Virus record (IMG/VR): IMGVR_UViG_3300044640_001495
Span: 124,001 to 188,000 of that record
Length of the DNA: 64,000 nt
Reading direction: 5' to 3' (one strand)
Of this stretch, positions 15,336 to 45,000 are shown piece after piece (positions within the stretch are counted from its first letter, which is position 1; each line of letters starts with the position of its first letter). The position numbers and the translations under genes were made by a program. A model generated the notes under the pieces. The model saw only the letters and a program-made list of their open reading frames with translations. It searched no databases and was not told the origin of the DNA.

Positions 15336-18005
15336 TTGAGTTACGTAGACGCTTTCTATAATAGAGAGCAGGATATCATCAATGTTGTTGAACGCAATGA
15401 TAAAGGCGAACGACATTACAAAGAATATCCTGCACGACATGTTTTTTATTACCCGGATGCCAAGGGTAAATTTACAAGTATTTTTGGACAGTCATTGTCC
15501 AGAGTAAGTTCCAAAAATGTCAAAGAACATCGCAAAGAACTTGCAATTCATTCAAACAAAAAACTGTTTGAAAGTGATATCAACCCAATCTATCGTTGTC
15601 TAGAAGACAACTATCTTAATCAAGACGCACCAAAATTAAATGTAGCGTTCTTTGACATTGAGGTGGACTTTGATCCAGAACGTGGCTATGCATCACCTGA
15701 AGATGCGTTTATGCCAATCACTGCTATTGCTGTCTACCTACAATGGATGCAGACTATGGTCTGTTTAGCAATTCCCCCTAAGACATTGTCAATGGAAGAA
15801 GCTACTAAACAGGTAGCAGAATTTCCTAACACTATGCTGTTTGACAACGAAGCAGATATGTTAGACACATTCTTAGATCTAATACAAGATGCAGATGTAC
15901 TGAGTGGTTGGAACAGTGAGGGCTTTGATATTCCTTACACAGTTAATCGTGTGACCAAAGTTTTGAGCAAAGAGGACACACGCAGATTCTGCTTGTGGGA
16001 TCAATTCCCCAAGAAACGAGAGTATGAAAAATACGGCAAGGCCGCTGTCACATACGATCTAATTGGCCGTGTACACCTAGACAGTCTTGAACTATATCGC
16101 AAGTACACATACGAAGAACGCCATACCTATCGACTGGATGCTATTGGAGAGATGGAGATCGGTGAAAACAAGACTGTGTACGAAGGCACACTGGATCAAT
16201 TGTACAACAACGATTTCCGTAGATTTATCGAATACAACAGACAAGACTGTATGCTGTTAGAAAAACTAGACAAGAAGCTAAAGTTCTTGGATCTTGCTAA
16301 CACACTGGCACATGAATGTACTGTGCTGTTGCAGACCACAATGGGTGCGGTAGCTGTTACTGAGCAGGCCATTATTAACGAAGCTCACAAGCGTGGAATG
16401 ATTGTTCCTAATAGAATATCTCGTGAAGAAGGCTTTAGTAATCAGGCTGCTGGTGCGTATGTTGCCTATCCTAAGAAAGGTATTCATGAGTGGATCGGTT
16501 CACTAGATATTAACTCGCTGTATCCGTCAGCAATTCGTGCGCTCAACATGGGTCCAGAAACTATTATTGGGCAGTTGCGTCAAGATGGCACCAAGGCATT
16601 CATTGACGGTGAGATTGCCAAAGGCAAAAGTTTTGCATCAGCATGGGAAGGCATCTTTGGTTCATTAGAATATGCAGCCGTACTAGAAAAAAATGTTGGT
16701 CGTGAAATCGTTATTGACTGGGAAGACGGTGGCTCTGATACACTAAGTGCTGCTCAGGCCTATGATCTAATCTTTGAAAGTAATCAGCCGTGGATGGTTA
16801 GTGCCAACGGAACTATTTTCACTTATGAAAAAGAAGGTATTATTCCGGGCTTGCTCAAGCGTTGGTATGCAGAACGTAAAGACATGCAGGCCAAACTCAA
16901 AGACTGCATTGCAGCTGGCAACAAGATTGAAGAAGAATACTGGGACAAGCGTCAGTTGGTCAAGAAGATTAACTTAAACAGTTTGTATGGTGCTATTTTG
17001 AATCCAGGTTGCCGCTTCTTTGATAACCGTATTGGACAAAGTACCACGCTAACAGGTCGTGCCATTGCCAAGCATATGGCTGGCAAAGTCAATGAGATCA
17101 TTACCGGCGAAAACAATCACACAGGTAAAGCAATTATCTATGGTGATACAGACTCTTGTTATTTTTCGGCTTACACCACCCTTAAGAAAGAAATAGATCG
17201 AGGAGCTCTGCCGTGGACAAAAGAAAGTGTTGTTGAACTCTATGACACCATCGGTGAAGAAGTAAACTCAACATTTCCTAAGTTCATGCAGGATGCGTTT
17301 CACTGTCCTAAGACTCGTGGTGAAGTTATTAAAGCTGGTCGTGAAATTGTTGCCAGTCGTGGCTTATTCATTACTAAGAAACGATATGCTGTGCTTTACT
17401 ATGACAAAGAAGGCAAACGTGCAGACGTAGACGGTAAGCCGGGCAAGATCAAGGCCATGGGTTTAGATCTGAAGCGCAGTGATACTCCTGTGATTATCCA
17501 AGACTTCTTAAGTGAAGTCTTGACCAAGGTTTTAAATAACGGCACCAAAGAAGATGTGCTGGAATATATCACTAACTTTCGAACTGAGTTCAAGACTAGA
17601 CCAGGTTGGGAGAAAGGATCACCTAAACGTGCCAACAACATTACAGAGTACGCTGCTAAAGAAAAGAAAGCAGGTAAGACTAACATGCCCGGACACGTTC
17701 GTGCAAGTCTTAACTGGAATACACTAAAACGTATGATGGATGACAAATACTCTGTGGCAATTACCGACGGTGCTAAAGTGATCGTTTGTAAGGTCAAAGA
17801 TAATCCAATGGGGTATACATCAGTAGCCTACCCCGTAGATGAACTTAGACTACCTCAATGGTTTAAGGACTTGCCTTTCAACGATGCTGAAATGGAAAAT
17901 GCAGTTATCGATGAAAAGTTAGAAAACTTGATTGGTGTTTTGGAATGGGACATCAGTTCAACTCGCAGTGATAATACATTCGCAAAATTGTTTGACTTTG
18001 AGTAA
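15336..18005 (+). CDS. family B DNA polymerase (T4 gp43-like)
   Basis: Exo FDIEVD, GWNSEGFDIPY, YNRQD; pol SLDINSLYPS, KINLNSLYG, YGDTDS; TTG start with SD. Confidence 0.97.
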   Translation: MSYVDAFYNREQDIINVVERNDKGERHYKEYPARHVFYYPDAKGKFTSIFGQSLSRVSSKNVKEHRKELAIHSNKKLFESDINPIYRCLEDNYLNQDAPKLNVAFFDIEVDFDPERGYASPEDAFMPITAIAVYLQWMQTMVCLAIPPKTLSMEEATKQVAEFPNTMLFDNEADMLDTFLDLIQDADVLSGWNSEGFDIPYTVNRVTKVLSKEDTRRFCLWDQFPKKREYEKYGKAAVTYDLIGRVHLDSLELYRKYTYEERHTYRLDAIGEMEIGENKTVYEGTLDQLYNNDFRRFIEYNRQDCMLLEKLDKKLKFLDLANTLAHECTVLLQTTMGAVAVTEQAIINEAHKRGMIVPNRISREEGFSNQAAGAYVAYPKKGIHEWIGSLDINSLYPSAIRALNMGPETIIGQLRQDGTKAFIDGEIAKGKSFASAWEGIFGSLEYAAVLEKNVGREIVIDWEDGGSDTLSAAQAYDLIFESNQPWMVSANGTIFTYEKEGIIPGLLKRWYAERKDMQAKLKDCIAAGNKIEEEYWDKRQLVKKINLNSLYGAILNPGCRFFDNRIGQSTTLTGRAIAKHMAGKVNEIITGENNHTGKAIIYGDTDSCYFSAYTTLKKEIDRGALPWTKESVVELYDTIGEEVNSTFPKFMQDAFHCPKTRGEVIKAGREIVASRGLFITKKRYAVLYYDKEGKRADVDGKPGKIKAMGLDLKRSDTPVIIQDFLSEVLTKVLNNGTKEDVLEYITNFRTEFKTRPGWEKGSPKRANNITEYAAKEKKAGKTNMPGHVRASLNWNTLKRMMDDKYSVAITDGAKVIVCKVKDNPMGYTSVAYPVDELRLPQWFKDLPFNDAEMENAVIDEKLENLIGVLEWDISSTRSDNTFAKLFDFE

Positions 18006-18064: not shown

Positions 18065-18802
18065 ATGAAAGATATTTTACAAGACATCGTGTCACACACA
18101 CAAAACCTAGGCTTCTTAACCACAGTTAAAGTCACAGGCACAGACAAAGGCACAACTATCAACTCAATGGCCGATGACCGTTCAGTGATTATGGAGGCAG
18201 AAACTGCTAATCCGTACCCAGACATGATTGGTGTGTTTGGCATGCCACAATTAAACAAATTAAAATATTTGTTAGATGGTGCTGAATACAAAGAAAATGC
18301 TAAAATTTCTATTACCACAGCAGATCGCAATGGTGAAACAATTCCAACAGGCTTACACTTTGAAAACAAAGACGGCGATTTTAAAAACGACTATCGTTTT
18401 ATGAATGCTGAAATTATCAACGAAAAGATGAAGACTGTCAAGTTCCGTGGAGTTAAGTGGGATGTAGAACTAGAGCCAACTGTATCCGCAGTTCAACGTT
18501 TTAACTTCCAAGCAGGTGCTCATAACGAACATCCAACATTCTTGGCAAAGACAGACGGTGGCAACCTAAAGTTTATCTTTGGTGATGCATCAACACACGC
18601 AGGTGAGTTTATATTTGCACAAAACGTTGTAGGCAAACTTGATCGTGGTTGGACTTGGCCTGTTATGCCAATCTTAAGTATTCTTAAGATTGCAGATGTC
18701 AACAACACCAAGATGTCGTTGAGCAATGAAGGTGCTATTCAAATTACTCTTGACAGCGGCCTAGCATCATACAAATATATCATTCCAGCACAAGCGGCCT
18801 AA
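18065..18802 (+). CDS. probable sliding clamp (gp45/PCNA-like)
   Basis: 245 aa directly after polymerase; C-terminal YKYIIPA; polymerase ends in clamp-binding-like LFDF. Confidence 0.55.
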   Translation: MKDILQDIVSHTQNLGFLTTVKVTGTDKGTTINSMADDRSVIMEAETANPYPDMIGVFGMPQLNKLKYLLDGAEYKENAKISITTADRNGETIPTGLHFENKDGDFKNDYRFMNAEIINEKMKTVKFRGVKWDVELEPTVSAVQRFNFQAGAHNEHPTFLAKTDGGNLKFIFGDASTHAGEFIFAQNVVGKLDRGWTWPVMPILSILKIADVNNTKMSLSNEGAIQITLDSGLASYKYIIPAQAA

Positions 18803-18803
18803 T

Positions 18804-20348
18804 ATGAAAGAACCAGTCAATTTAACTCCACTACAAAAAGACTATGCGGTATACTTACCTGCTATTAGTTCTTTTTATAGTACCTACGTTGCTAAACAGC
18901 GATTAGAAGAATTTGTACCCAACGATCGTATTCCTGCAGGATTCGATCGTGGCATTGAAGGTATGAACTTTTTAAATCCCGAACAAGGCTACTTTACCTA
19001 CAAGTATGCTTTATATTCAGCAGGTCATGCACAATTAGATTTGAATAAGAGCATGACACAGGAGTCGATGATTCAACAGAGAGATCGTGCTAACACAATG
19101 ATCTTGGGCGACTCCGGTGGATACCAAATTGGTAAGGGTGTGTTAAAGTTTGATTGGCTCAACTTCGAAGGCCCCGCTGCAAACAAGACACGACAAAATA
19201 TTTTAGAGTGGCTTGAACTAACTGCTGATTGGTCCATGATGCTAGACGTTCCAACATGGGCATGTGATCACATTCACAGTCCCAAGACTGGATTGAAAAC
19301 ATTTGAAGATTGTCTAGAAAAGACACGATTCAATAACGATTACTTCTTGCAAAATCGTCTAGGCCAGACCAAATGGCTCAACGTACTGCAAGGCGGAGAC
19401 TGGGATACTGCTGAAAAGTGGTATAACGGCGTGAAAGAATTTAGTGATCCCAAAGGCAAATATGCCGGTAAGGAAGCAGAAGGTTGGGCAATGGGTGGCG
19501 CTAATATGTGCAAGATGCCCATTACACTAAAGAGGTTGATAACATTGAGAGACGAAGGTCTCTTAGAAGGCAAGGACTGGATGCACTTTTTAGGTACAGC
19601 ACAGCTTGACTGGTCGTGTTATCTTACATTAATTCAACGTGAAATTAAAAAGCACATAAATGAAAACTTTACCATCTCTTTTGATTGCGCCTCACCGTTC
19701 ATTGCAACAGCACACGGACTTGTCTACACCAACGCCCAGCACACCAACAAACGGTGGAGTGTTATCATGGACAAAGCCCCAGACACAAAAACCCTTAGCC
19801 AGAATTTTAACATCCCCTTCCCATTTGAAAGTGAATTCGGAAGTAGATTATCAATAGGCGATATCTGTTGGTACAAGCCTGGAATGCTTAACAAGATCAA
19901 CAAAGAAGGTAAAACTTCTTGGGATAGCTTCAGCTATGCACTAATGATGGGGCATAATGTTGAATGTCATATTAAGGCCGTACAACGTGCTCAACAATTC
20001 ATGGATATTGAATGTGCTAAACATAAGCCTGACTGGCGTATGTGGGGCGTTGAAGGCAAGAAAGAAATTGAATTCAGCGAATGGGTTCCACGCAAGATCC
20101 TTTACTTTGCCACATTCATTGAAGAATTGTTCAATACTAAAACTAAAGCCGAAGCATTTACATTGATCGACAATGCCAATCAATTCTTGACCAGTCTCGA
20201 AGGTGCTCGACTACAAGGCGGGCCAGTTGCCTATGGCAATAAAGATCTGTTTGATTGGGGTGATGCCAAGAAAGTTAAAGAAGAAGAATTTGATCAACAA
20301 GATGATGATGAGCTACGTGCATTGGAAGAAATCGTTCAAGGAGCATAA
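18804..20348 (+). CDS. dpdA: DpdA/tRNA-guanine transglycosylase-like protein
   Basis: TGT-fold motifs GDSGGYQ, MMLDVP, NVLQG, GWAMGG, HFLG, SFD; co-located with folE/queD/queE. Confidence 0.8.
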   Translation: MKEPVNLTPLQKDYAVYLPAISSFYSTYVAKQRLEEFVPNDRIPAGFDRGIEGMNFLNPEQGYFTYKYALYSAGHAQLDLNKSMTQESMIQQRDRANTMILGDSGGYQIGKGVLKFDWLNFEGPAANKTRQNILEWLELTADWSMMLDVPTWACDHIHSPKTGLKTFEDCLEKTRFNNDYFLQNRLGQTKWLNVLQGGDWDTAEKWYNGVKEFSDPKGKYAGKEAEGWAMGGANMCKMPITLKRLITLRDEGLLEGKDWMHFLGTAQLDWSCYLTLIQREIKKHINENFTISFDCASPFIATAHGLVYTNAQHTNKRWSVIMDKAPDTKTLSQNFNIPFPFESEFGSRLSIGDICWYKPGMLNKINKEGKTSWDSFSYALMMGHNVECHIKAVQRAQQFMDIECAKHKPDWRMWGVEGKKEIEFSEWVPRKILYFATFIEELFNTKTKAEAFTLIDNANQFLTSLEGARLQGGPVAYGNKDLFDWGDAKKVKEEEFDQQDDDELRALEEIVQGA

Positions 20349-21215: not shown

Positions 21216-21367
21216 AATGTACAACCTGTGGTCAAGCTATTTCAGAAACTTGTTCTTGGAACCAAGGACGATGCCCGCATCTGCCTAGTCTTGCAGAACA
21301 AATCATAAACAATCCCTACAAGGCACGTTTTCTTAATCTACTTAAATTTTTTAAAATCATAAAATGA
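21212..21367 (+). CDS. 51-aa Cys4 microprotein
   Basis: MKCTTCGQAISETCSWNQGRCPH...; ATGA overlaps at both ends; not in ORF track. Confidence 0.65.
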   Translation: MKCTTCGQAISETCSWNQGRCPHLPSLAEQIINNPYKARFLNLLKFFKIIK

Positions 21368-21891
21368 AAAGAAATTATTCCACTGGTATAGAAACTGCTA
21401 TAGAGTTTTTTACAGGCATTGAGATCGAAAAGACTCCTGCACATGGCATGAAAACACTGTTTGTTGTAGGAGTGCATGACGATCAAATTATTACCACCAT
21501 GGCCAAGAACAATGATTGCACACACATCTATTTTGGTGCTAATCAAAGTTTTAAAACCGATGGCGTTAATGATGCACACAATTGGCGCATGTGGGAAGAC
21601 ATGATCTATGTCTGCTTGGAAGAGGGCTACTGGTGTACACTAGACTTAGATGTCAGTGAAGTTGAAGGACTTCTTGAAAGCGGGCTTGTTGAGAAACAGC
21701 AGTTTATTCCGCAGATTTCGGTTAAACTGCCCTATTTACAACAGCTGGGATATAATGCTACAATAAAGATAGACGACAAAGATTTTAAGGCAACAAATCC
21801 TGGAGTGTGGTGCCATAACCTCCATGACCTACTTGGTAGAGACAAGTTTACCAGTTGGGATCAATATGGCAAAGATGAGATTATAAAATGA
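21364..21891 (+). CDS. hypothetical protein
   Basis: 175 aa, HIYFGANQSF motif; coupled in deazaguanine region. Confidence 0.85.
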   Translation: MKRNYSTGIETAIEFFTGIEIEKTPAHGMKTLFVVGVHDDQIITTMAKNNDCTHIYFGANQSFKTDGVNDAHNWRMWEDMIYVCLEEGYWCTLDLDVSEVEGLLESGLVEKQQFIPQISVKLPYLQQLGYNATIKIDDKDFKATNPGVWCHNLHDLLGRDKFTSWDQYGKDEIIK

Positions 21892-22268: not shown

Positions 22269-22492
22269 AACATCCCAATCTAGATGTAAAAAAAATCACG
22301 ATAAAAGAAACTGATGCATACAGAGTTCGTGTTGAAAGTTGGGAAAGTATAAGTCCACAAGGACTGTTTGCAGTAGATATCATTCAAGAATGTTTAGACA
22401 CTGAGAAAAATATCACTGAATCCAGTACCTACAATTTTCACATGACTAGAGAAGAAATTAAAACGCTGTGCGAAGGACTGTTGTCATTATGA
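22265..22492 (+). CDS. hypothetical protein
   Basis: 75-aa coupled ORF. Confidence 0.75.
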   Translation: MKHPNLDVKKITIKETDAYRVRVESWESISPQGLFAVDIIQECLDTEKNITESSTYNFHMTREEIKTLCEGLLSL

Positions 22493-22878
22493 TTATCAAA
22501 CAAGACATTAGACCCAACAAAATGATTTGGGTTACCTTTCAGAAAGAAGGTATGCACAAATATCCAGCGGCGCTGACAGACCCAGCACTTGCTACAGGAG
22601 ATGAATATGATGTAAGTTTCCTAGGCTATCCGCATCGGCATATCTTCCACTTTAAAGTTTGGATTGGTGTTACCCACGATGATCGAGATATTGAGTTTAT
22701 TCAGTTTAAACGATGGTTGCTAAATCTTTATAAAGATGCTACACTTAGTTTAGACTACAAGAGTTGTGAAATGATGTCAGGCGATTTGTATGACGTCATT
22801 AACAAAAAGTATCCAGGTCGTGAGGTTTGGATTGAGGTCTCCGAAGACGGAGAAAATGGTTCATTTATTAAGTACTAA
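22489..22878 (+). CDS. queD: QueD-like 6-carboxytetrahydropterin synthase (T-fold)
   Basis: HxY...PHRHIFHF, IEF, SCEM, VSEDGENG; ATG 22489 coupled. Confidence 0.75.
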   Translation: MIIKQDIRPNKMIWVTFQKEGMHKYPAALTDPALATGDEYDVSFLGYPHRHIFHFKVWIGVTHDDRDIEFIQFKRWLLNLYKDATLSLDYKSCEMMSGDLYDVINKKYPGREVWIEVSEDGENGSFIKY

Positions 22879-22891
22879 AAGGAAAGCTATA

Positions 22892-23149
22892 ATGGCTAAG
22901 AATTACAGAGATTATTCCTATTTTGAAAATCGTCCCGACGTTGTTCGGATCTTTGATGACTTGGATACATATCTAGATTGGTGTAGATTAGAACTGCAAC
23001 CATTTAATCCTGCAGATCTCTATAAGAGAGATTCTGTAACTTATCAGTCTTACCTGGCAAGTCGTCGTCCAGCAAGACGCCCATATTTAGGCAACAAGCC
23101 TCGTTGGGACAATAACGGTCGTCGCAATGAGCAGAATTTTTCTCGTTGA
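22892..23149 (+). CDS. hypothetical protein
   Basis: ATG 22892 with AAGGA SD. Confidence 0.75.
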   Translation: MAKNYRDYSYFENRPDVVRIFDDLDTYLDWCRLELQPFNPADLYKRDSVTYQSYLASRRPARRPYLGNKPRWDNNGRRNEQNFSR

Positions 23150-24230
23150 TCTAGAAGCAGTTGAGACAAGGTACACGGGTCAATGGAAGACTCATGTACC
23201 TGCACTCTTACGAAAGGCAGGACACAATGTCAACATTATATCAGGTCCTACGGACATTCCTAGTGCTACCACTCCTGGGGCATTTCTCAACTTTGGCGGC
23301 ACTAATATCTACAAGGCTAGTCAAGTTGAGCAGATGGGCCGTTTATTTTGTTCCGGAGCAGTTAAGCCTGGCGATCATTTTTTGTTTACTGACGCTTGGC
23401 ATCCTGGTATCATAAACTTAAAGTATATGAGCGAGTTGCTGGGCATTCCAATAACAACACATGGCTTATGGCATGCTGGTTCATATGATCCGCAAGACTT
23501 CCTAGGACGTCTTGTTGGCAACAAGCCTTGGGTGCGTAATGCAGAGAAATCGTTCTTTTCTGCCTTTGATCACAACTACTTTGCCACTGACTTTCATATT
23601 GAATTGTTTAATAGAGAATTACTGAACAATGGGCATACTGTAGAAAATCCTTGGTACGAGGAAGAACTTAAAGAAATACTTGCAGGCGAGTATCCTAAGT
23701 TTGTACGCACAGGTTGGCCTATGGAGTATATGCAGGACACTTTGCTAATGTATAAGAACATGAAGAAGCGTGATCTTATTCTATTCCCGCATCGTGTTGC
23801 TCCAGAGAAACAGGTTGAAATATTCCGTGATCTAAAACATCAGTTGCCGCAATATGAATTTGTTGTTTGTCAAGATCAACAGTTGACCAAAAATGAATAT
23901 CACAATTTGTTAGGTGAAGCAAAAATGGTATTCAGTGCCAATCTACAAGAAACACTGGGTATCAGTTGGTACGAAGGTGCTATTGTGGATGCTATTCCAA
24001 TGGTGCCGGATCGCCTAAGCTATAGCGAAATGGCTCTTGATACATTTAAGTATCCTAGCAAATGGACTGAAAGTTTTGAAGCATATACTGTATATCGTCC
24101 AGACATCTGTAAAACAATTATAGAACATATGGAAAATTACAGAACTCGTATATCTAGCCTAAATAAACAGGTAGATATACTAAAAGAAAACTTTTTTAGT
24201 TGCAATAAACTATTAGAGATGTTAAAATAA
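23127..24230 (+). CDS. GT-B fold glycosyltransferase
   Basis: FTDAWHPG, HAGS, ILFPHR..PEKQ, ETLGISWYEG (ExFG...E-type signature). Confidence 0.8.
   Translation: MSRIFLVDLEAVETRYTGQWKTHVPALLRKAGHNVNIISGPTDIPSATTPGAFLNFGGTNIYKASQVEQMGRLFCSGAVKPGDHFLFTDAWHPGIINLKYMSELLGIPITTHGLWHAGSYDPQDFLGRLVGNKPWVRNAEKSFFSAFDHNYFATDFHIELFNRELLNNGHTVENPWYEEELKEILAGEYPKFVRTGWPMEYMQDTLLMYKNMKKRDLILFPHRVAPEKQVEIFRDLKHQLPQYEFVVCQDQQLTKNEYHNLLGEAKMVFSANLQETLGISWYEGAIVDAIPMVPDRLSYSEMALDTFKYPSKWTESFEAYTVYRPDICKTIIEHMENYRTRISSLNKQVDILKENFFSCNKLLEMLK
24200..24228 (+). promoter_or_regulatory. sigma70-type promoter upstream of folE
   Basis: TTGCAA-N17-TAAAAT. Confidence 0.55.
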
Positions 24231-24272
24231 TATAACAAATGTCATCCACGACATTAACTCGGAGAAATAAAA

Positions 24273-25016
24273 TTGACAAGTAAAGAAACAGGCTTGGACG
24301 CAATGGCAGGCGATGGCGGATATGAAGAAGCATACCTATCAGATGTACTTCGCTTTAAAATGAAGCGTGAAGGAAAACGCTTTTGGGCAGGCGATAACAT
24401 CAGCGACTATCTGTATGAAGGCGATATAGAACGACTAATTGACGAAGCAACGCCCGCATTTGAACAAGTGCTAGACAAGTTGCTCATTGATCGCGAGAAC
24501 GATCCTAACAGTAAAGGTACAGCCCGTCGACTGGCTAAAATGTACTTCAATGAAATCATGGAAGGTAGATATCAAGCTGCTCCAGATTGTACTGCTTTTC
24601 CCAACGATAGTGAGGATAGATATGAGGGTATGTTGGTTGTTCGCAGTGAGCTTCGTAGCATGTGCAGTCACCATCACCAGCCTGTGGCTGGCGTCGCGTA
24701 TATCGGTATCATCGCCGCACAAAAACTTATCGGCTTGTCAAAGTACACAAGAATAGCACAGTGGTGTGCTAGACGTGGTACTCTGCAAGAAGAACTATGT
24801 AACGACATTGCCCGTGAGATTAGCAAGGCAACTGATAGCGACAATGTAGCAGTCTATATACAGGCCACACATGGTTGCTGTGAGAATCGTGGCATCATGG
24901 CACACTCTAGTCTAACACAGACTACAGTACTTAAAGGTTCGTTTAAAGATGATCCTCACACAAAGAAAGAGTTTTTTGATAACATCAAACTACAACAAGA
25001 GTTTGCACCACGATAA
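24273..25016 (+). CDS. folE: GTP cyclohydrolase I
   Basis: SMCSHHHQP, IGLSKYTRI, LQEEL, HGCCENRG; TTG start with GGAG SD. Confidence 0.95.
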   Translation: MTSKETGLDAMAGDGGYEEAYLSDVLRFKMKREGKRFWAGDNISDYLYEGDIERLIDEATPAFEQVLDKLLIDRENDPNSKGTARRLAKMYFNEIMEGRYQAAPDCTAFPNDSEDRYEGMLVVRSELRSMCSHHHQPVAGVAYIGIIAAQKLIGLSKYTRIAQWCARRGTLQEELCNDIAREISKATDSDNVAVYIQATHGCCENRGIMAHSSLTQTTVLKGSFKDDPHTKKEFFDNIKLQQEFAPR

Positions 25017-25532: not shown

Positions 25533-25751
25533 ATGACTACCGCAAAAGAACTAACCGATAATTTAATTAATCGTGCAAAAAACTTGCAGGAGTTTGTTGT
25601 AGAACGAGACTGGGATTTAATTCCCGCTGGTGTAATCAAATATAACATACAGCACACTGTGGGCCAACCTGCACGTATCTTTGTACACGCAATGACACAA
25701 CAAGAAGCAGAGCGTCAAGTAGATGATTGGTTTGGTGAAGGTGTAGAATGA
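25533..25751 (+). CDS. hypothetical protein
   Basis: 72-aa ORF. Confidence 0.7.
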   Translation: MTTAKELTDNLINRAKNLQEFVVERDWDLIPAGVIKYNIQHTVGQPARIFVHAMTQQEAERQVDDWFGEGVE

Positions 25752-26167
25752 TTAAACCTCTACGTAATGACCTAATGGTACAACAACAGGTAGACGATGC
25801 TTGGCAGCATTTTGTCGGTGTAATCATGCTGAATCAAACTGGACGCAAAGCTGTAAAGACCACGCTACCAGAATTCCTATATTGGTTTCCTACAGCACTA
25901 TCTTTGTTACACGCAGACGAAGAGTTTGTCAAAAGCATTATCCAACCCTTGGGAATGGTTAATGTTCGCTATAGTCGTTTGATTAGAATGAGTCAAGACT
26001 ATTTGACTTGGGACGGAAATGATGCTACAAAGTTATATGGCATTGGAAAATACGGCAGCGACAGCTATGAAATTTTTTACAAGAACAATTATGGCGTAAT
26101 GCCTACGGACAAAGAATTAATAAGATACCTCAAGGAAGAAGTTGAAAATGTTTTTGAAACTGCTTGA
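25748..26167 (+). CDS. MBD4-like HhH-GPD DNA glycosylase
   Basis: WQHFVGVIMLNQT, FP, QPLGM, LYGIGKYGSDSYEIF, VMPTDKEL (catalytic Asp position). Confidence 0.85.
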   Translation: MIKPLRNDLMVQQQVDDAWQHFVGVIMLNQTGRKAVKTTLPEFLYWFPTALSLLHADEEFVKSIIQPLGMVNVRYSRLIRMSQDYLTWDGNDATKLYGIGKYGSDSYEIFYKNNYGVMPTDKELIRYLKEEVENVFETA

Positions 26168-26600
26168 ACAGTTAGGTCGCAAACGTATCATTTTTGATCG
26201 TGTTTGCAACGAGCCTTACCTAGAACGCTACTATGTGTTTTTAAAAGATCGAACGCACTTTCCATTCAACATATTCTTACACAAATTCCTAAAAGGTGAT
26301 CCCGATGATGTACATGATCATCCGTGGCCTTACGCCACTCTAATTTTAAAAGGAGGTTACTACGAATACACTCCTAATTTTGAATATGGCAAAATGGTCG
26401 GAGAAACTAAGCATTGGCGCGGGCCTGGACACTTTCGAATCTGTAGTTCTAATAGCTATCATCGTATCGAATTAAAACAAGGAGTCACTGCTTGGACTCT
26501 GTTCATGCCCGGCCCACACAAACGCGATTGGGGATTTTTAGTCAACAACAAATGGATTCAACACGAGCAGTATCTTAAGGAGCGTCATGGAAAAGCGTAA
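26148..26600 (+). CDS. cupin-fold protein
   Basis: LHKF..GD..VHDHPW..LKGGY.E and YHRI...WTLF motifs. Confidence 0.7.
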   Translation: MFLKLLEQLGRKRIIFDRVCNEPYLERYYVFLKDRTHFPFNIFLHKFLKGDPDDVHDHPWPYATLILKGGYYEYTPNFEYGKMVGETKHWRGPGHFRICSSNSYHRIELKQGVTAWTLFMPGPHKRDWGFLVNNKWIQHEQYLKERHGKA

Positions 26601-27132
26601 AGTAAGTTGGCAAGAGTTTCAAGGCCTAGTGGCAAAGATTTGTAGAGATATTTCTCTAAATAAATGGCGCCCAGATTACGTAGTAGGCATTACCCGAGGC
26701 GGGCTATTGCCTGCTGTCATGATCAGTCAGTATTTTAATATTCCCTGCGAAACACTGAAAGTAAGTCTACGAGACAACGGCGGTGATCATGCCACTGAAA
26801 GCAATCTTTGGATGTCTGAAGATGCATTCGGTTATCCTATATACGACCTTATGGTGTCAGGCGGTGAAAAAAAGAATATACTGGTAGTAGACGATATCAA
26901 CGATACAGGTGCAACTATTAACTGGATTTTAAACGATTGGCAATCTGGATGTTTACCCGATGACGAAAGATGGCTTGACGAAATATGGAATCAAAATGTA
27001 AAGTTTGCCACAATATTCGATAACCTTGCCAGCGAGTCCAAAGTCAAAATGGACTATGTTGGGGAAGAGATCAACAAAGCAGAAAATCCTGTATGGATTG
27101 AATTTCCCTTTGAAGAGTGGTGGACTAAATGA
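26587..27132 (+). CDS. type I phosphoribosyltransferase (purine PRT-like)
   Basis: VVGITRGGLLPA, ILVVDDINDTGAT PRPP-binding motif. Confidence 0.88.
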   Translation: MEKRKVSWQEFQGLVAKICRDISLNKWRPDYVVGITRGGLLPAVMISQYFNIPCETLKVSLRDNGGDHATESNLWMSEDAFGYPIYDLMVSGGEKKNILVVDDINDTGATINWILNDWQSGCLPDDERWLDEIWNQNVKFATIFDNLASESKVKMDYVGEEINKAENPVWIEFPFEEWWTK

Positions 27133-27509
27133 GAAAAGAAGATTACATACTAGCAGATGCAGAGAAGGAAGGTATTGCACCGTGGAAGGACTTGGTCCGG
27201 GAAGACTTCCATGTCAAGGTCTTTAAAGATAAGTACCCTGTATCCGAAGGTCATTTGTTGTTTGTGCCGCAGTATGCAGCCGATGGAGTGATTGTCGACT
27301 GCTTTAGTGATGCACTAACACACGGCAAAGATATGGTAGAGAAAGGTGAGTGGGATGGATTTAATATTGGAATCAATTGGGGTGAGGCAGCGGGTCAGAC
27401 CGTAATGTACCCGCATATACATCTAATTCCAAGACGCAAAGGAGACATGGCGGATCCTCGTGGCGGTGTTAGACATGTTATTCCAGAAAAAGGAAATTAT
27501 AAAAAATGA
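27129..27509 (+). CDS. HIT-family hydrolase
   Basis: KYPVSEGHLLFVP, GFNIGIN.G.AAGQTV..PHIHLIPRR. Confidence 0.9.
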   Translation: MRKEDYILADAEKEGIAPWKDLVREDFHVKVFKDKYPVSEGHLLFVPQYAADGVIVDCFSDALTHGKDMVEKGEWDGFNIGINWGEAAGQTVMYPHIHLIPRRKGDMADPRGGVRHVIPEKGNYKK

Positions 27510-29482: not shown

Positions 29483-30346
29483 ATGAGCAAAATTAAAATC
29501 GCAGAGCTGTTTTACAGCATACAAGGTGAAGGTAGATACATGGGTGTGCCTAGTGTATTCTTACGCACATTCGGGTGTAACTTTAAATGTGCCGGCTTCG
29601 GTATGCCTCGTGGGGAAGTAAGTCACGAAGCTACTGACATTGCGGCTACACATAAAATGATTACGCCTTTTACAAAGTATGAAGATTTACCATTAGTTAG
29701 TACTGGATGTGACAGCTACGCTAGTTGGCATCCTGACTTTAAAGAGTTGTCGCCTATGCTTACTAGCGAAGCAATCGTAGAACGAATTATGGAAATTATT
29801 CCGTTTGAAGAATGGCGTGATGAACATCTGGTTATCACAGGTGGCGAACCTTTGCTAGGTTGGCAACGTGCTTATCCTGATTTGTTGAATCATCCAAAGA
29901 TGGGCAAGTTAAAAGAAATTACTTTTGAAACAAATGGTACTCAGAAACTAACTCCAGAGTTTAAACAGTATCTAAAACAATGGGCACAGAATCCGCCATT
30001 TGCCTCTAGAGAAATTACATTCTCAGTAAGTGCTAAACTTCCTTGCAGTGGCGAAAAGTGGGAAGAAGCTATCCTTCCAGAAGTCGTTTGCGAGTACGAA
30101 GAAGTTGGTACAGCATATTTGAAGTTTGTTATTGCTACAGAACAAGACTTTGCTGATGCCGAGTGTGCGATTGCCGCATATCGTAAAGTAGGCTTTACAG
30201 GTCATGTATATCTAATGCCGGTAGGCGGCGTGGAAAGTGTCTACGCATTAAACAATAAGAATGTAGCATTGCTAGCAATGAAAAACGGACTACGTTATAG
30301 TGACCGTTTACAAGTGCCGCTGTTTAAAAATGAGTGGGGTACCTAA
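29483..30346 (+). CDS. queE: 7-carboxy-7-deazaguanine synthase (radical SAM)
   Basis: ELFYSIQGEG..G.PSVFLRTFGC, CDS, VITGGEP, ETNG, LMP, RLQV. Confidence 0.9.
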   Translation: MSKIKIAELFYSIQGEGRYMGVPSVFLRTFGCNFKCAGFGMPRGEVSHEATDIAATHKMITPFTKYEDLPLVSTGCDSYASWHPDFKELSPMLTSEAIVERIMEIIPFEEWRDEHLVITGGEPLLGWQRAYPDLLNHPKMGKLKEITFETNGTQKLTPEFKQYLKQWAQNPPFASREITFSVSAKLPCSGEKWEEAILPEVVCEYEEVGTAYLKFVIATEQDFADAECAIAAYRKVGFTGHVYLMPVGGVESVYALNNKNVALLAMKNGLRYSDRLQVPLFKNEWGT

Positions 30347-30786
30347 TGAAGAAGTTTATAGAAAAACTGTTTGGCATTGACAAGATCAAGGCCGAAACTG
30401 CGGCAGCAGTACAACTGGCCGAGGCCTCAACAAAAATTGCCAAAGATGCAGTCGAGGCTGCGGAACGTGCTGTAGAAGCAGAAGAAACTGCTAAACTAAG
30501 TCCAAAAGATCGTGCTACCAAACTAAAGGAACCTTGGGTAGGTGTACTTAACACTCACGTTAATAAAGATAATATCCGCAATGGCTTTTTTGAGCTTGAC
30601 TGGAACGAGCAGTTTGTGTTAAAATTAAAGCAAGAAGGATATGGTTTCGACGGCGATAAAGACGAAGAGATTGTAGATCGTTGGTTCCGTGAACTATGTG
30701 CTAATGTAGTAGTTGACGGAGATTTTGGCGGCGCTGTAAACACTGGCGTTATTGATATTAATGAAGTTCGAAAGAAGAATCTATGA
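30346..30786 (+). CDS. hypothetical protein
   Basis: ATG 30346 (TAATG coupling). Confidence 0.8.
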   Translation: MKKFIEKLFGIDKIKAETAAAVQLAEASTKIAKDAVEAAERAVEAEETAKLSPKDRATKLKEPWVGVLNTHVNKDNIRNGFFELDWNEQFVLKLKQEGYGFDGDKDEEIVDRWFRELCANVVVDGDFGGAVNTGVIDINEVRKKNL

Positions 30787-31769
30787 CATATATTTTAGTT
30801 GATACTGCAAACACCTTTTTTCGTGCAAGACACGTTATCAACGGTGACGCTGATATCAAACTAGGCATGGCATTTCATATCACACTTAACAGTATTAAGA
30901 AAGCATGGCAAGACTTTGATGGGAAACATGTGGTATTCTTCTTAGAGGGGCGCAGCTGGCGTAAAGATTTTTACAAACCCTACAAGGCACAACGCACTGC
31001 GGCTCGGGCGGCACATACAGAGCGAGAAGCAGAAGAAGAACGTGTATTTTGGGAAGCCTTTGACACATTTAAAGATTTTGTTACAGAAAAAACTAACTGC
31101 ACAGTACTACAACATCCACGCCTAGAAGCTGATGATTTAATTGCAGGTTGGATACAAAGTCATCCTAGCGATAATCATGTGATCATTTCAACAGATACAG
31201 ATTTCGTACAACTAATTTCACCTAATGTAAAACAATATAATGGCGTCACAGAAACCACAATCACGCACGAAGGCTACTTTGATAAAAAAAATAAGCCCAT
31301 CATTGATAAAAAAACTCAAGAAGTCAAAGCGGCTCCGGATCCACAATGGCTACTTTTTGAAAAGTGCATGCGAGGCGATACCTCAGACAATGTATTCTCT
31401 GCATATCCGGGAGTACGTGAAAAAGGCACAAAGAATAAGGTTGGTCTCCGTGAAGCCTACGGTGATAGAGACTCAAAAGGCTATGCGTGGAACAATCTCA
31501 TGCTTCAACGCTGGTCCGACCACAACGGTCAAGAACATCGTGTGCTAGATGACTACGAACGCAATCGTCAATTGATTGATCTGGCTGCACAACCAGCCGA
31601 GATTAAACAAATTATGGTTGACACAATTACAACAGCAACGCAGGCAAATAAAAACGTCAGCCAAGTTGGTATTAGATTAATGAAATTTTGCAATCTGTAT
31701 GATCTTAAAAAGATTGCCGATCAGGCACAAGCCTATGCTGAGCCACTGAATGCGAGATATATACTATGA
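30783..31769 (+). CDS. rnh: T4 RNase H-like 5'-3' exonuclease
   Basis: LVDTAN..FR, EADDLIA, STDTDF.QL, GDTSDNV. Confidence 0.9.
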   Translation: MTYILVDTANTFFRARHVINGDADIKLGMAFHITLNSIKKAWQDFDGKHVVFFLEGRSWRKDFYKPYKAQRTAARAAHTEREAEEERVFWEAFDTFKDFVTEKTNCTVLQHPRLEADDLIAGWIQSHPSDNHVIISTDTDFVQLISPNVKQYNGVTETTITHEGYFDKKNKPIIDKKTQEVKAAPDPQWLLFEKCMRGDTSDNVFSAYPGVREKGTKNKVGLREAYGDRDSKGYAWNNLMLQRWSDHNGQEHRVLDDYERNRQLIDLAAQPAEIKQIMVDTITTATQANKNVSQVGIRLMKFCNLYDLKKIADQAQAYAEPLNARYIL

Positions 31770-41506: not shown

Positions 41507-41523
41507 GTATCTAGTATAGATTA

Positions 41524-44410: not shown

Positions 44411-45000
44411 ATTGTTTCAAATATATATTTGTCAAAAATTCGCCTTGTATAAACACTAAATCTATTTGGCAAATCTAATGTAAATAATTTTGTATTTTCT
44501 GTAATGTCGCCTGCCCTAATGCTTAACATATGAAGGAGGACATTGGGGTCGTTGTAATCAGTTACTAAAAAAATCATTTCAGTTGCACCGTCCCAAATAA
44601 TATTATTTGAGTATTTGTCGCTCATTGAAAATATTAATGTACTATTTTTTGTATCATGTGAAATTGTGATATCAGGATCTTGCATATTTGACCACTTTTT
44701 ATCTATTATTCTATGCAAGATGTCATCGATCTTTATTAGACTATGGGTGGAAAATTTGTTTAATTTAACTAATTTCTTAGTTGGTAAATCAACCCTATAA
44801 GAAAATAGATTTTCCTCTCCTGTAGAAACTGCTGTGGCAATTTCTTCATCAATTTTTATATTATTTGTATTATCAAATACCGCATGAGAAGGATATATTC
44901 CAATTAAAGATCCGTCATCTTTAAATGTTGCATAGTATTCGACGGTTTGATTGACTGGTAATTTAATCCACTCGTCAAAGTCCATTAATTCTTGTTCCAT
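44407..45000 (-). CDS. hypothetical protein
   Basis: 197 aa, coupled inside GT operon. Confidence 0.8.
   Translation of the reverse strand: MEQELMDFDEWIKLPVNQTVEYYATFKDDGSLIGIYPSHAVFDNTNNIKIDEEIATAVSTGEENLFSYRVDLPTKKLVKLNKFSTHSLIKIDDILHRIIDKKWSNMQDPDITISHDTKNSTLIFSMSDKYSNNIIWDGATEMIFLVTDYNDPNVLLHMLSIRAGDITENTKLFTLDLPNRFSVYTRRIFDKYIFETI

What the first reader, a model, noticed from the sequence alone, without database searches (positions are those of the whole stretch)
22489..25016. Glycosyltransferase wedged between queD and folE: candidate glycosylated deazaguanine
Seen: queD-like, an 85-aa ORF, a GT-B enzyme and folE in series with overlaps or short gaps. Established: T4 GT-B enzymes glucosylate hmC in DNA. 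No hmC synthesis gene is visible here. Inference: this GT adds a sugar to the 7-substituent of the inserted deazaguanine, giving an undescribed hypermodified base.
Basis: inference. Interest (0 to 1): 0.75.

Follow-up and report, generated by a model that had tools for sequence, protein, structure and literature searches.

The report
Glycosyltransferase tied to deazaguanine DNA modification
A jumbo phage carries an intact sugar-transferring enzyme that, in many unrelated phages, always sits beside the genes that put 7-deazaguanine into DNA, so these phages may make a sugar-bearing purine base that nobody has yet described.

Summary
The four ORFs exist as described. The 367-aa ORF has no Pfam, PHROG, NCBIfam or PDB sequence hit, but it folds confidently (pLDDT 95) as a GT-B enzyme. 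Its closest structures are retaining GT4 transferases (Z 24-25), and its family keeps the EX7E and R-x4-K donor motifs. folE is confirmed.

The "queD-like" ORF is not QueD. It is DpdL, the proposed 7-carboxy-7-deazaguanine decarboxylase (LxxxHRHxF motif; homologous to phiST gp040). The real QueD lies 26 kb before the window. A TGT-fold DpdA-like transglycosylase lies 3 kb upstream and QueE 5 kb downstream. No QueC or hmC/hmU synthase was found.

In five isolated phage lineages and five metagenomic ones the GT sits next to DpdL and/or a DpdA. All 17 GenBank phage records with a full-length GT also have DpdL. Eleven DpdL records lack the GT, including phiST, whose DNA carries plain 7-deazaguanine. 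The GT is therefore an optional add-on.

A glycosylated deazaguanine is plausible and undescribed in the library searched. "Sugar on the 7-substituent" is not supported, because DpdL is proposed to remove that substituent. The acceptor atom, the donor, and whether the enzyme acts on the free base or on DNA remain unknown.

The parts
15336..18005 (+). Family B DNA polymerase. It marks the replication module in which the modification genes sit.
   Evidence: PF00136 1e-34 and PF03104 3e-19. The order PolB-clamp-DpdA-GT is syntenic with PA5oct-like phages and Phosso.
18065..18802 (+). Sliding-clamp-like protein.
   Evidence: phrog_12062 3.5e-37 and a weak hit to phrog_223, processivity factor. Homologous to the Phosso and PA5oct-like clamp/PCNA genes.
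18804..20348 (+). DpdA-like DNA-guanine transglycosylase (TGT superfamily), 514 aa.
   Evidence: DSGGYQ motif. Profile A4 hits only TGT chains in the PDB, weakly (E 0.02). The AF2 model has pLDDT 67, and its top 50 PDB matches are all TGT at E about 1e-8. phmmer gives 5e-14 to the L085 402-aa protein, whose relatives carry PF01702. It is 41% identical to the ORF upstream of the GT in PA5oct-like phages. It has no direct Pfam hit.
21364..21891 (+). 175-aa protein of unknown function that travels with the module.
   Evidence: Homologues lie next to DpdA in ACP17 (1.3e-15) and directly upstream of the GT in L088 (1.2e-28). Present in 70 of 80 lineage loci. The Atlas gave only sub-threshold leads.
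22489..22878 (+). DpdL (QueD-paralogous T-fold protein, proposed 7-carboxy-7-deazaguanine decarboxylase).
   Evidence: The motif LGYPHRHIF fits LxxxHRHxF, the DpdL signature in PMC10516641. BLASTP gives 6e-14 to phiST gp040. 71% identical to the Phosso ORF upstream of its GT. No PTPS Pfam hit. phrog_17812 2.7e-30.
22892..23149 (+). 85-aa basic protein (pI 9.4), lineage-specific, function unknown.
   Evidence: Ribosome-binding site plus ATG. Conserved between DpdL and the GT in 75 of 80 related loci. No family hit. Absent from distant GT loci.
23127..24230 (+). Divergent GT4-type GT-B glycosyltransferase, 367 aa. This is the finding's central gene.
   Evidence: AF2 pLDDT 95.2, pTM 0.91. VIA Z 25.3 to sucrose-phosphate synthase, 24.8 to BshA and 23.8 to MshA; Foldseek prob 1.0. 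E275-x7-E283, R223-x4-K228, H116 and G118 are conserved across 50 relatives at 29-53% identity. 38 of 53 relatives hit PF00534 weakly. The family has 1077 clusters at 50% identity.
24273..25016 (+). GTP cyclohydrolase I (FolE), the first step of deazaguanine synthesis.
   Evidence: PF01227 4e-40; phrog_2197 4.5e-45; NCBIfam FolE 1.6e-40.
25748..26167 (+). Small HhH-GPD (EndoIII/MutY-like) protein. Its role in the module is unclear.
   Evidence: PF00730 1e-7; a weak mutY hit. Phosso has a 'glycosylase' gene just upstream of its DpdL-GT pair. Present in 25 of 80 lineage loci.
26142..26600 (+). Cupin-like protein.
   Evidence: phrog_4786 2.8e-36. Present in 63 of 80 lineage loci. A cupin/'epimerase domain' gene sits at the same relative position in PA5oct-like phages, by annotation only.
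26587..27132 (+). Purine-type phosphoribosyltransferase.
   Evidence: PF00156 4.5e-14. The best NCBIfam hits are xanthine and hypoxanthine PRTases, below cut-off. A PRT also lies in the module in PA5oct-like phages, L089 and L092.
27129..27509 (+). HIT-family (HinT-like) nucleotide hydrolase/transferase.
   Evidence: PF01230 1.2e-9; NCBIfam HinT 3e-12.
29483..30346 (+). QueE (radical-SAM 7-carboxy-7-deazaguanine synthase).
   Evidence: phrog_2076 2.3e-48; five NCBIfam QueE models at 1e-9 to 3e-15; weak PF04055.

Best explanation
The window holds a QueC-less, 'DpdL-type' 7-deazaguanine DNA-modification module inside the replication gene block of a jumbo phage of about 350 kb.

Inferred pathway, from family assignments:
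- FolE, QueD (encoded 26 kb upstream of the window) and QueE make 7-carboxy-7-deazaguanine from GTP.
- DpdL is proposed to decarboxylate it to 7-deazaguanine.
- The 514-aa TGT-fold DpdA-like enzyme swaps that base for guanine in DNA.

The 367-aa ORF is a divergent but catalytically intact GT4-type (retaining, NDP-sugar-dependent) GT-B enzyme. It is an optional add-on to this module. It is gained and lost among DpdL phages, tracks DpdL, and is not tied to one DpdA clade.

My best reading is that it acts downstream of DpdL and transfers a sugar onto the DpdL-derived deazaguanine unit, so that virion DNA carries a glycosylated 7-deazaguanine.

What is shown:
- the fold;
- the conserved donor-site residues;
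- the gene linkage.

What is inferred:
- that the acceptor is the deazaguanine unit;
- that the sugar reaches DNA.

What is unresolved:
- Whether transfer occurs on DNA after insertion. I lean slightly this way, because the add-on works with two different DpdA clades.
- Or whether it occurs on the free base before insertion.
- Which atom is glycosylated. The DpdL product has no 7-substituent, so the site would have to be N2, O6 or a ring carbon, or DpdL does something different here.
- Which NDP-sugar is the donor.
For: Fold and active site:
- AF2 pLDDT 95.
- Z 24-25 to the retaining GT4 enzymes SPS, BshA and MshA.
- EX7E, R-x4-K, H116 and G118 are conserved across relatives of 29-53% identity.
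- 38 of 53 relatives give weak PF00534 hits.

Linkage of the GT in other phages:
- Phosso: DpdL overlaps the GT, with FolE and QueE nearby.
- ACP17: DpdA-GT-DpdL-QueE, overlapping or abutting.
- PA5oct-like phages: DpdA-GT-DpdL-...-PRT-QueE.
- Xanthomonas BUDD and X1: BUDD has FolE-...-GT-DpdA-DpdL-QueE; in X1 the GT and DpdL lie 1.5 kb apart.
- Burkholderia BCSR5: GT and DpdL are 2.8 kb apart.
- Metagenomic L085/86: DpdL-GT-x-DpdA. L087: FolE-DpdL-GT in a PolA phage. L089: QueD-PRT-DpdL-x-QueE-GT-x-FolE. L101: DpdA-DpdL-GT. L103: QueD-FolE-DpdL-x-GT.

Co-occurrence counts:
- All 17 GenBank phage records with a full-length GT have DpdL, while DpdL occurs in only 28 of 50,697 records.

Optional add-on:
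- 11 DpdL records lack the GT, including phiST, whose DNA is fully 7-deazaguanine (PMC10516641).
- GT-bearing phages use two different DpdA clades.

Sugar context:
- L103 continues directly into further GTs and NDP-sugar synthesis genes.
- L092 has a canonical GT4 next door.

External evidence:
- PA5oct virion DNA resists several restriction enzymes. It is reported to carry an uncharacterised modified G and is targeted by sensors of modified G (PMC12191111).
- A GT4-type enzyme that glycosylates a 7-deazapurine base already exists: HuiG of the huimycin pathway (bioRxiv 10.64898/2026.04.15.718813).

No alternative acceptor pathway:
- There is no thymidylate-synthase-family gene in this record or in the complete twin genome.
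Against: - No chemistry has been measured for any GT-bearing phage.
- The expected DpdL product, 7-deazaguanine, has no hydroxyl or other 7-substituent to accept a sugar (PMC10516641).
- DpdL's decarboxylase activity is itself only proposed. Co-expression of DpdL with DpdA from ACP17 and from phiST in E. coli gave no dDG.
- The protein is acidic (net charge -6; family median pI 5.7). Only two basic residues are conserved in its acceptor domain.
- Its nearest structures all act on small anionic metabolites, which fits DNA poorly.
- A phage DNA alpha-glucosyltransferase appears only at rank 39 with TM 0.5.
- The window protein itself has no family-model hit.
- The 80 IMG/VR loci recovered are one lineage and are not independent evidence.
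Confidence: 0.5

Rival explanations
1. The GT glycosylates the free deazapurine base, or its PRT-made nucleotide, before incorporation. The DpdA-like enzyme or the polymerase then installs the already glycosylated unit. This is a variant of the main explanation in which the acceptor is a small molecule.
For: The closest structures are all GT4 enzymes with small, mostly anionic acceptors: BshA with malate, MshA with inositol-phosphate, SPS with fructose-6-phosphate, GlgM with glucose-1-phosphate, LmbT with ergothioneine. The protein is acidic. The GT tracks DpdL, a presumed small-molecule enzyme, and not one DpdA clade. HuiG is a GT4-type enzyme acting on a free 7-deazapurine base. A purine-type PRT recurs in the module, as in CDG-based tubercidin synthesis.
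Against: TGT-family pockets read the 2-amino/6-oxo face tightly, so a sugar there should block insertion. The GT is gained and lost between phages that share related DpdA enzymes (ACP17 versus BUCT-ZZ01). That is easier to explain if DpdA need not adapt to a bulkier base. N9 must stay free for insertion.
Confidence: 0.22
2. The GT is needed to make or insert the deazaguanine itself and no sugar remains in the DNA. It could act through a transient glycosyl intermediate or as an obligate partner of DpdL or DpdA.
For: There is tight translational coupling with DpdA and DpdL in several lineages. ACP17 DpdL plus DpdA alone gave no dDG in E. coli, and the authors suggested that further enzymes may be required.
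Against: phiST also failed in that assay and has no GT. Eleven DpdL records lack the GT, and phiST reaches full dDG substitution without it. The donor-site residues are conserved as in true transferases. The complex prediction gave no answer either way.
Confidence: 0.1
3. The GT has an acceptor unrelated to deazaguanine, such as a host surface glycan, a virion protein or another metabolite. It merely shares an early operon with the modification genes.
For: Jumbo phages often carry glycan-modifying GT clusters (PMC7824862). The twin genome has a separate GDP-sugar/GT cluster. In L103 the GT abuts a polysaccharide-type gene set.
Against: Adjacency to DpdL and DpdA is kept across about ten lineages with different polymerases and genome sizes. 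The co-occurrence with DpdL is 17 of 17 records against a background of 28 in 50,697.
Confidence: 0.1
4. One reading: a T4-like DNA glucosyltransferase adds a sugar to the 7-substituent (carboxyl, aminomethyl or similar) of an inserted deazaguanine.
For: The fold is GT-B, like T4 AGT and BGT. The module makes CDG, which has a 7-carboxyl (QueE). DpdL's decarboxylase role is unproven.
Against: DpdL accompanies the GT in nearly every lineage, and its only correlated product is unsubstituted 7-deazaguanine. There is no QueC or QueF to make aminomethyl or amido groups. No specific similarity to phage DNA GTs was found.
Confidence: 0.08

Closest known systems
DpdL-type dDG system of Cellulophaga phage phiST (Cui et al. 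2023, PMC10516641)
   Same: Both have FolE, QueD, QueE, DpdL with the LxxxHRHxF motif and a TGT-superfamily transglycosylase, and neither has QueC. The window DpdL is homologous to phiST gp040 (6e-14).
   Different: phiST has no GT. It has a small 259-aa DpdA3 that shows no BLAST similarity to the window's 514-aa enzyme. Its DpdL sits between a MazG-like pyrophosphatase and a kinase-like ATPase. Its measured base is plain 7-deazaguanine.
PA5oct-like Wroclawvirus, Acidovorax phage ACP17, Sinorhizobium phage Phosso, Xanthomonas phages BUDD and X1
   Same: They carry orthologous GTs (26-50% identity) in the same DpdA/DpdL/QueE context. PA5oct is reported to have an uncharacterised modified G (PMC12191111).
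   Different: None has a determined base chemistry. The GT is annotated only as 'hypothetical' or 'glycosyltransferase'. ACP17 and BUDD use a different DpdA clade, related to that of Vibrio phage nt-1.
T4 alpha- and beta-glucosyltransferases (DNA 5-hmC glucosylation)
   Same: Both are GT-B-fold phage enzymes that decorate a non-canonical base as a second layer over a base-replacement pathway.
   Different: No specific structural or sequence similarity was found. A cyanophage DNA alpha-GT ranks 39th at TM 0.5, and no T4 enzyme is in the PDB top 50. There is no hmC or hmU pathway here. The presumed acceptor base has no hydroxymethyl group.
Retaining GT4 small-molecule glycosyltransferases (BshA, MshA, sucrose-phosphate synthase, GlgM)
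   Same: These are the best structural matches, covering the whole chain at Z 23-25. They share the EX7E and R-x4-K motifs.
   Different: Sequence identity is only 10-14%. The N-terminal acceptor domain has its own signature (E10, R15, Y16, W20, D89, W91, D121, D124), and the usual glycine-rich first loop is absent.
HuiG of the huimycin pathway (GT4-type, UDP-GlcNAc, 7-deazapurine base acceptor)
   Same: It is a GT4-family enzyme that glycosylates a 7-deazaguanine-derived free base (bioRxiv 10.64898/2026.04.15.718813).
   Different: It belongs to actinomycete secondary metabolism, its substrate is made via QueC (preQ0) and is O-methylated, and it has no link to DNA.
   Same: They add a sugar to a 7-deazaguanine derivative after it has been inserted into a polynucleotide.
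   Different: Their acceptor is the cyclopentenediol of queuosine in tRNA. No such enzyme appeared among the top 30 Swiss-Prot structural matches.

Membership tests
GT-B fold, GT4-type retaining glycosyltransferases | Two Rossmann-like domains with an inter-domain cleft and a C-terminal helix crossing back. | tested here: met
   AF2 pLDDT 95.2. Full-length alignment to BshA, MshA and SPS at Z 24-25, rmsd about 3 A over about 300 residues.
GT-B fold, GT4-type retaining glycosyltransferases | EX7E motif and R/K pair for the NDP-sugar in the C-terminal domain. | tested here: met
   E275-x7-E283 (E283 invariant, E275 at 90% or more) and R223-x4-K228 are conserved in 50 relatives. hhalign aligns the motif to that of a canonical GT4, but weakly (E 3.5e-4, prob 37%). 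The roles of these residues are inferred from position.
GT-B fold, GT4-type retaining glycosyltransferases | Match to the curated family model (PF00534/PF13439) above threshold. | tested here: not met
   The window protein has no Pfam hit at E <= 0.01. 38 of 53 relatives hit PF00534 at E <= 0.1, best 6.5e-7. It is therefore a divergent sister group and not a model-defined member.
GT-B fold, GT4-type retaining glycosyltransferases | NDP-sugar-dependent transfer activity. | not testable with these tools
   Needs an enzyme assay.
T4-type phage DNA glucosyltransferases | Specific structural or sequence kinship to AGT or BGT. | tested here: not met
   Absent from the PDB top 50. The only DNA alpha-GT in the viral library ranks 39th, at TM 0.50 by query and 0.44 by hit.
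T4-type phage DNA glucosyltransferases | A partner pathway making a hydroxymethyl-pyrimidine acceptor. | tested here: not met
   No PF00303-family gene in the 199-kb record or the 98%-complete twin genome.
QueD (CPH4 synthase), for ORF 22489-22878 | CxxxHGH motif and a PTPS family match. | tested here: not met
   The motif reads LGYPHRHIF and there is no PF01242 hit even at E 10. A true QueD with PF01242 at 1.8e-13 lies at G000:C1:22164-22577.
DpdL (proposed CDG decarboxylase), for ORF 22489-22878 | LxxxHRHxF motif and homology to phiST DpdL. | tested here: met
   The motif is present (definition in PMC10516641). BLASTP gives 6e-14 to phiST gp040. The same motif is found in the ORF beside the GT in Phosso, ACP17, BUDD, L085, L087, L089 and L101.
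DpdL (proposed CDG decarboxylase), for ORF 22489-22878 | Genomic context of FolE, QueD, QueE and DpdA without QueC. | tested here: met
   Caveat: the complete twin genome has a 310-aa PP-loop ORF with a partial QueC match (25 bits, N-terminal 65 positions only) 75 kb away.
DpdL (proposed CDG decarboxylase), for ORF 22489-22878 | Decarboxylase activity yielding 7-deazaguanine. | not testable with these tools
   It is also unproven in the literature.
DpdA/TGT superfamily, for ORF 18804-20348 | TGT TIM-barrel fold with the DSGG(F/Y)Q substrate motif. | tested here: met
   The top 50 PDB matches are all TGT, at E 1e-8 to 2e-7. DSGGYQ is invariant in the family. The model is of moderate quality (pLDDT 67).
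DpdA/TGT superfamily, for ORF 18804-20348 | Match to PF01702, or assignment to a named DpdA subfamily. | tested here: inconclusive
   There is no direct Pfam hit. PF01702 is recorded only on homologues of a homologue. No BLAST similarity to phiST DpdA3, and only weak similarity to the ACP17 DpdA (E 0.002).

The most novel reading that the evidence does not exclude
A widespread group of environmental jumbo phages, together with the isolates PA5oct, ACP17, Phosso, BUDD/X1 and BCSR5, replaces guanine with a glycosylated 7-deazaguanine. To my knowledge this would be the first sugar-bearing purine in any DNA. It would be made by a previously unrecognised GT4-like enzyme family acting on the DpdL product. 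It would also be the unidentified 'modified G' of PA5oct.
Probability: 0.4. Interest if true: 0.85.

Novelty: new variant of a known kind. Interest (0 to 1): 0.7.

Why it matters
To my knowledge, sugar decoration of DNA bases is known only for pyrimidines: glucosyl- and arabinosyl-hmC in T-even phages and base J in kinetoplastids. The 7-deazaguanine DNA modifications described so far carry no sugar. A glycosyltransferase that travels with DpdL and DpdA in many phage lineages points to a new class of purine hypermodification. It would have consequences for restriction, CRISPR and glycosylase-based defences.

It also gives a concrete candidate gene for the uncharacterised modified G of PA5oct, whose DNA is sensed by END nucleases. 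PA5oct, ACP17, Phosso and BUDD are cultured phages, so the question can be tested directly by LC-MS.

The GT family is large (more than 1000 clusters at 50% identity), and this member matches no current family model. Annotation pipelines therefore miss it.

Tried and rejected
- Direct family and sequence searches of the GT found nothing: Pfam, PHROGs, NCBIfam, and PDB by sequence. Only the structure identified it.
- The search for related loci with the wide alignment failed because it had no conserved stretch. With a narrower alignment it returned 80 loci, all from one lineage at 76-100% identity, so they are not independent evidence of linkage. Independent loci had to be fetched one by one. 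Four were too short to inform (L088, L095, L102, L104). One 7-kb contig (L092) shows no DpdL.
- Complex prediction of the GT against DpdA(1-470) plus DpdL returned 'no answer' (score 0.01). This is no evidence for or against binding.
- Pterin-glucoside idea (FolE plus a PTPS-like enzyme plus a BGluT-like GT): tetrahydrobiopterin glucosyltransferases are only mid-list matches (Z 20.9, rank 35), and QueE and DpdA are present. Rejected.
- Queuosine-glycosyltransferase kinship: none in the top 30 Swiss-Prot matches.
- hmC or hmU as the acceptor: no thymidylate-synthase-family gene.
- Atlas search for the 175-aa neighbour gave only sub-threshold glycoside-hydrolase-like leads. Not used.
- hhalign of the GT family against a canonical GT4 gave only a weak local match.
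- Literature searches for a hexosylated or glycosylated deazaguanine in phage DNA, for DpdL follow-ups, for PA5oct base chemistry and for Phosso found nothing beyond PMC10516641 and PMC12191111.

Full report
**What is in the sequence.**

The window is part of a 199-kb IMG/VR virus record (G000:C1:48450-112449, about 53% complete). A 353-kb record that is 98% complete (G001) carries an identical copy of the central gene. The four ORFs of the finding lie on the + strand:

- 22489-22878, 129 aa from the ATG. The ATG overlaps the stop of the previous ORF.
- 22892-23149, 85 aa, with a good ribosome-binding site.
- 23127-24230, 367 aa, overlapping the 85-aa ORF by 23 nt.
- 24273-25016, 247 aa, with a TTG start after a GGAG site.

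They sit in a one-directional replication block. In order it contains:

| Gene | Coordinates |
|---|---|
| Family B polymerase | 15336-18005 |
| Clamp-like protein | 18065-18802 |
| 514-aa ORF | 18804-20348 |
| Several small ORFs | between 20348 and 22489 |
| The four ORFs of the finding | 22489-25016 |
| HhH-GPD protein | 25748-26167 |
| Cupin-like protein | 26142-26600 |
| Purine-type phosphoribosyltransferase | 26587-27132 |
| HIT protein | 27129-27509 |
| QueE | 29483-30346 |
| 5'-3' exonuclease | 30783-31769 |

**The glycosyltransferase.**

The 367-aa protein has no hit in Pfam, PHROGs or NCBIfam, and no hit to PDB sequences. It belongs to a very large family: more than 8000 clusters at 90% identity and 1077 at 50% identity.

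With an alignment of 50 relatives at 29-53% identity, AlphaFold2 gives pLDDT 95.2 and pTM 0.91. The model is a complete GT-B fold. VIA-align gives these matches, each over about 300 residues of the whole chain:

- Z 25.3 to sucrose-phosphate synthase;
- Z 24.8 to BshA;
- Z 23.8 to MshA;
- Z 23.2 to GlgM.

Foldseek agrees. All of these are retaining GT4 enzymes, and most have small anionic acceptors.

The family conserves several residues:

- E275-x7-E283, the EX7E motif;
- R223-x4-K228;
- H116 and G118;
- an acceptor-domain signature of its own: E10, R15, Y16, W20, D89, W91, D121, D124.

38 of 53 relatives give weak PF00534 hits. I therefore treat it as a divergent, catalytically intact GT4-type enzyme.

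Kinship to the T4 DNA glucosyltransferases is limited to the shared fold. None is in the PDB top 50, and a cyanophage DNA alpha-GT ranks 39th in the viral library at TM 0.5.

**The neighbour is DpdL, not QueD.**

The 129/136-aa ORF has no PTPS hit even at E 10. It reads LGYPHRHIF where QueD has CxxxHGH. Cui et al. 2023 (PMC10516641) define exactly this change, LxxxHRHxF, as the signature of DpdL. DpdL is the QueD paralogue they propose as the 7-carboxy-7-deazaguanine (CDG) decarboxylase. It occurs in phages that have FolE, QueD, QueE and DpdA but no QueC.

The window ORF aligns to phiST gp040 at 6e-14. By its position (DpdL, then the ATPase, then the 259-aa DpdA3) and its motif, gp040 is that paper's DpdL. 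A genuine QueD (PF01242, 1.8e-13) is encoded 26 kb before the window. No QueC is found in the 199-kb record. The complete twin has only a 310-aa PP-loop ORF with a partial 25-bit QueC match, 75 kb away.

**A transglycosylase is present.**

The evidence that the 514-aa ORF is a TGT-superfamily enzyme is as follows:

- It carries DSGGYQ.
- A small family profile hits only TGT chains in the PDB, weakly (E 0.02).
- Its AF2 model (pLDDT 67) has TGT structures as all 50 top matches, at E about 1e-8.
- It is linked by phmmer (5e-14) to a metagenomic family in which many members carry PF01702.

It is 41% identical to the ORF immediately upstream of the GT in PA5oct-like phages. The module is therefore FolE, QueD and QueE making CDG, then DpdL, then a DpdA-like enzyme. 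This matches the set associated with 2'-deoxy-7-deazaguanosine in phiST.

**Linkage of the GT family.**

tblastn against 50,697 phage records finds 17 records with a full-length homologue: Phosso, ACP17, eleven PA5oct-like phages, BUDD, X1 and BCSR5. All 17 are also among the only 28 records that contain DpdL.

| Locus | Gene order or spacing |
|---|---|
| Phosso | DpdL overlaps the GT; FolE and QueE follow |
| ACP17 | DpdA, GT, DpdL and QueE overlap or abut |
| PA5oct-like | PolB-PCNA-DpdA-GT-DpdL-...-PRT-QueE |
| BUDD | FolE-...-GT-DpdA-DpdL-QueE |
| L085/86 | DpdL-GT-x-DpdA |
| L087 (a PolA phage) | FolE-DpdL-GT |
| L089 | QueD-PRT-DpdL-x-QueE-GT-x-FolE |
| L101 | DpdA-DpdL-GT |
| L103 | QueD-FolE-DpdL-x-GT |

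The metagenomic representatives in the last five rows are 30-44% identical to the window GT. One 7-kb contig (L092) shows no DpdL, and four contigs were too short to tell. The 80 IMG/VR loci found by pattern search are one lineage. They show only that the order DpdA ... DpdL-orf85-GT-FolE ... QueE is stable within that lineage.

**The GT is an optional add-on that follows DpdL.**

Eleven DpdL records lack it: the phiST group, Chryseobacterium MA9V-3, Rhizobium RHph_I1_18, Aeromonas Ahp1, Vibrio Bakedbeans and D479, and Synechococcus BUCT-ZZ01. phiST reaches complete dDG substitution without it.

GT-bearing phages use at least two different transglycosylase clades:

- The window type is shared with PA5oct-like phages and Phosso. 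In Phosso it lies 170 kb from the GT.
- The ACP17/BUDD type is related to the DpdA of nt-1/KVP40-like vibriophages and to that of the GT-less BUCT-ZZ01.
- phiST's DpdA3 is a third type.

The DpdL proteins of GT-bearing and GT-less phages are interleaved in similarity. The simplest reading is a downstream decoration step layered on the DpdL product.

**What it most likely does.**

I infer that the enzyme transfers a sugar from an NDP-sugar onto the deazaguanine unit made by this module. Four observations support this:

- In L103 the GT runs straight into further glycosyltransferases (GT10 and two GT2) and NDP-sugar synthesis genes.
- In L092 a canonical GT4 is adjacent.
[quoted passage not shown] It is reported to carry an uncharacterised modified G and is restricted by sensors of modified G (PMC12191111).
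- A GT4-type enzyme that glycosylates a 7-deazapurine base already exists: HuiG of the huimycin pathway, which uses UDP-GlcNAc.

DpdL is proposed to remove that substituent, and no QueC or QueF is present to build another. The acceptor would then have to be N2, O6 or a ring carbon, or DpdL must do something different when the GT is present.

Whether transfer happens on DNA or on the free base or nucleotide is open.

- For DNA: the add-on is gained and lost without regard to DpdA clade, and the gene is translationally coupled to DpdA in several phages.
- For a small-molecule acceptor: the nearest structures, the acidic charge (net -6, family median pI 5.7), only two conserved basic residues in the acceptor domain, and the HuiG precedent.

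A prediction of a GT-DpdA-DpdL complex returned no answer.

**Other members of the module.**

- The PRT is closest to xanthine and hypoxanthine-guanine PRTases, and it recurs in PA5oct-like phages, L089 and L092.
- It could recycle the guanine released by transglycosylation back towards GTP. Or, as in CDG-based tubercidin synthesis, it could make a deazapurine nucleotide. Both readings are inference.
- The HIT, cupin, HhH-GPD, 175-aa and 85-aa proteins are conserved to varying degrees, and I did not assign them roles.

**Novelty.**

In the library searched, no paper describes a glycosylated deazaguanine in DNA or a role for this GT. The DpdL paper does not contain the string 'glycosyl'.

The system is a new variant of a known kind: the 7-deazaguanine DNA modification system with an added, unrecognised glycosyltransferase family. 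If the product is confirmed it would, to my knowledge, be the first sugar-bearing purine in DNA. Several cultured phages carry the gene, so the decisive experiments are straightforward: nucleoside LC-MS, a GT knock-out and an in-vitro transfer assay.

Noticed in passing
G000:C1:22164-22577 (about 26 kb before the window start; locus L004): The phage's true QueD (PF01242 1.8e-13) is encoded apart from the rest of the module. PA5oct likewise has its PTPS gene (gp230) far from QueE (gp162).
   Followed up: partly
window 25748-26167: A 139-aa HhH-GPD (EndoIII/MutY-like) protein sits inside the modification module. Phosso has a 'glycosylase' gene just upstream of its DpdL-GT pair. END nucleases sense modified G through an inactivated EndoIII domain (PMC12191111), so this small protein could be a decoy, or a repair or processing factor.
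   Followed up: no
window 26587-27509: A purine-type (XGPRT/HGPRT-like) phosphoribosyltransferase and a HinT-like HIT protein lie in the module. PRTs recur next to the GT in PA5oct-like phages, L089 and L092 (there with NUDIX and a PurT-like ATP-grasp). This resembles the CDG plus PRT logic of tubercidin synthesis, or it may salvage the guanine released by DpdA.
   Followed up: partly
L103:5790-15487 (JGI 3300009149 contig): Directly downstream of QueD-FolE-DpdL-x-GT lies a run of GT10, two GT2, RmlA-like and RmlC-like genes, several epimerase/dehydratases, an acetyltransferase and a DegT aminotransferase, all on the same strand. It could build a more complex glycan on the same acceptor, or it could be an unrelated glycan cluster.
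   Followed up: no
G001:C1:278000-290000 (locus L109), outside the window and beyond the end of record G000: The complete twin genome encodes GDP-mannose 4,6-dehydratase (8e-117), an epimerase/reductase, a DegT aminotransferase, a ManC-like nucleotidyltransferase/isomerase and a DXD glycosyltransferase. This GDP-sugar pathway could supply a donor for the GT or serve surface-glycan modification.
   Followed up: partly
G001:C1:70927-71859 (L100:991-1923, - strand): A 310-aa PP-loop ORF with a partial QueC match (25 bits, only the N-terminal 65 model positions) lies next to a fatty-acid desaturase, 75 kb from the module. It is probably not QueC, but it keeps 'no QueC' from being absolute.
   Followed up: partly
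window 21364-21891: A 175-aa acidic protein with no family is conserved with the module in ACP17 (next to DpdA) and in L088 (directly upstream of the GT). It is present in 70 of 80 lineage loci.
   Followed up: partly
window about 38000-47000: GC content falls from about 0.41 to 0.32, and GC and AT skew change sign near 42 kb. This suggests a switch of transcription direction and possibly a differently composed gene block.
   Followed up: no
L101:5984-7306: An IS605-type OrfB/TnpB (Cas12f-like) element with its HTH gene lies about 0.8 kb upstream of the DpdA-DpdL-GT block in this metagenomic phage contig.
   Followed up: no
L097 (Rhizobium phage RHph_I1_18), 7408-8232: In this GT-less DpdL phage, the gene following FolE-DpdL is a macro-domain (Appr-1-p processing) protein. 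It may be an alternative accessory function at the position where other phages carry the GT.
   Followed up: no
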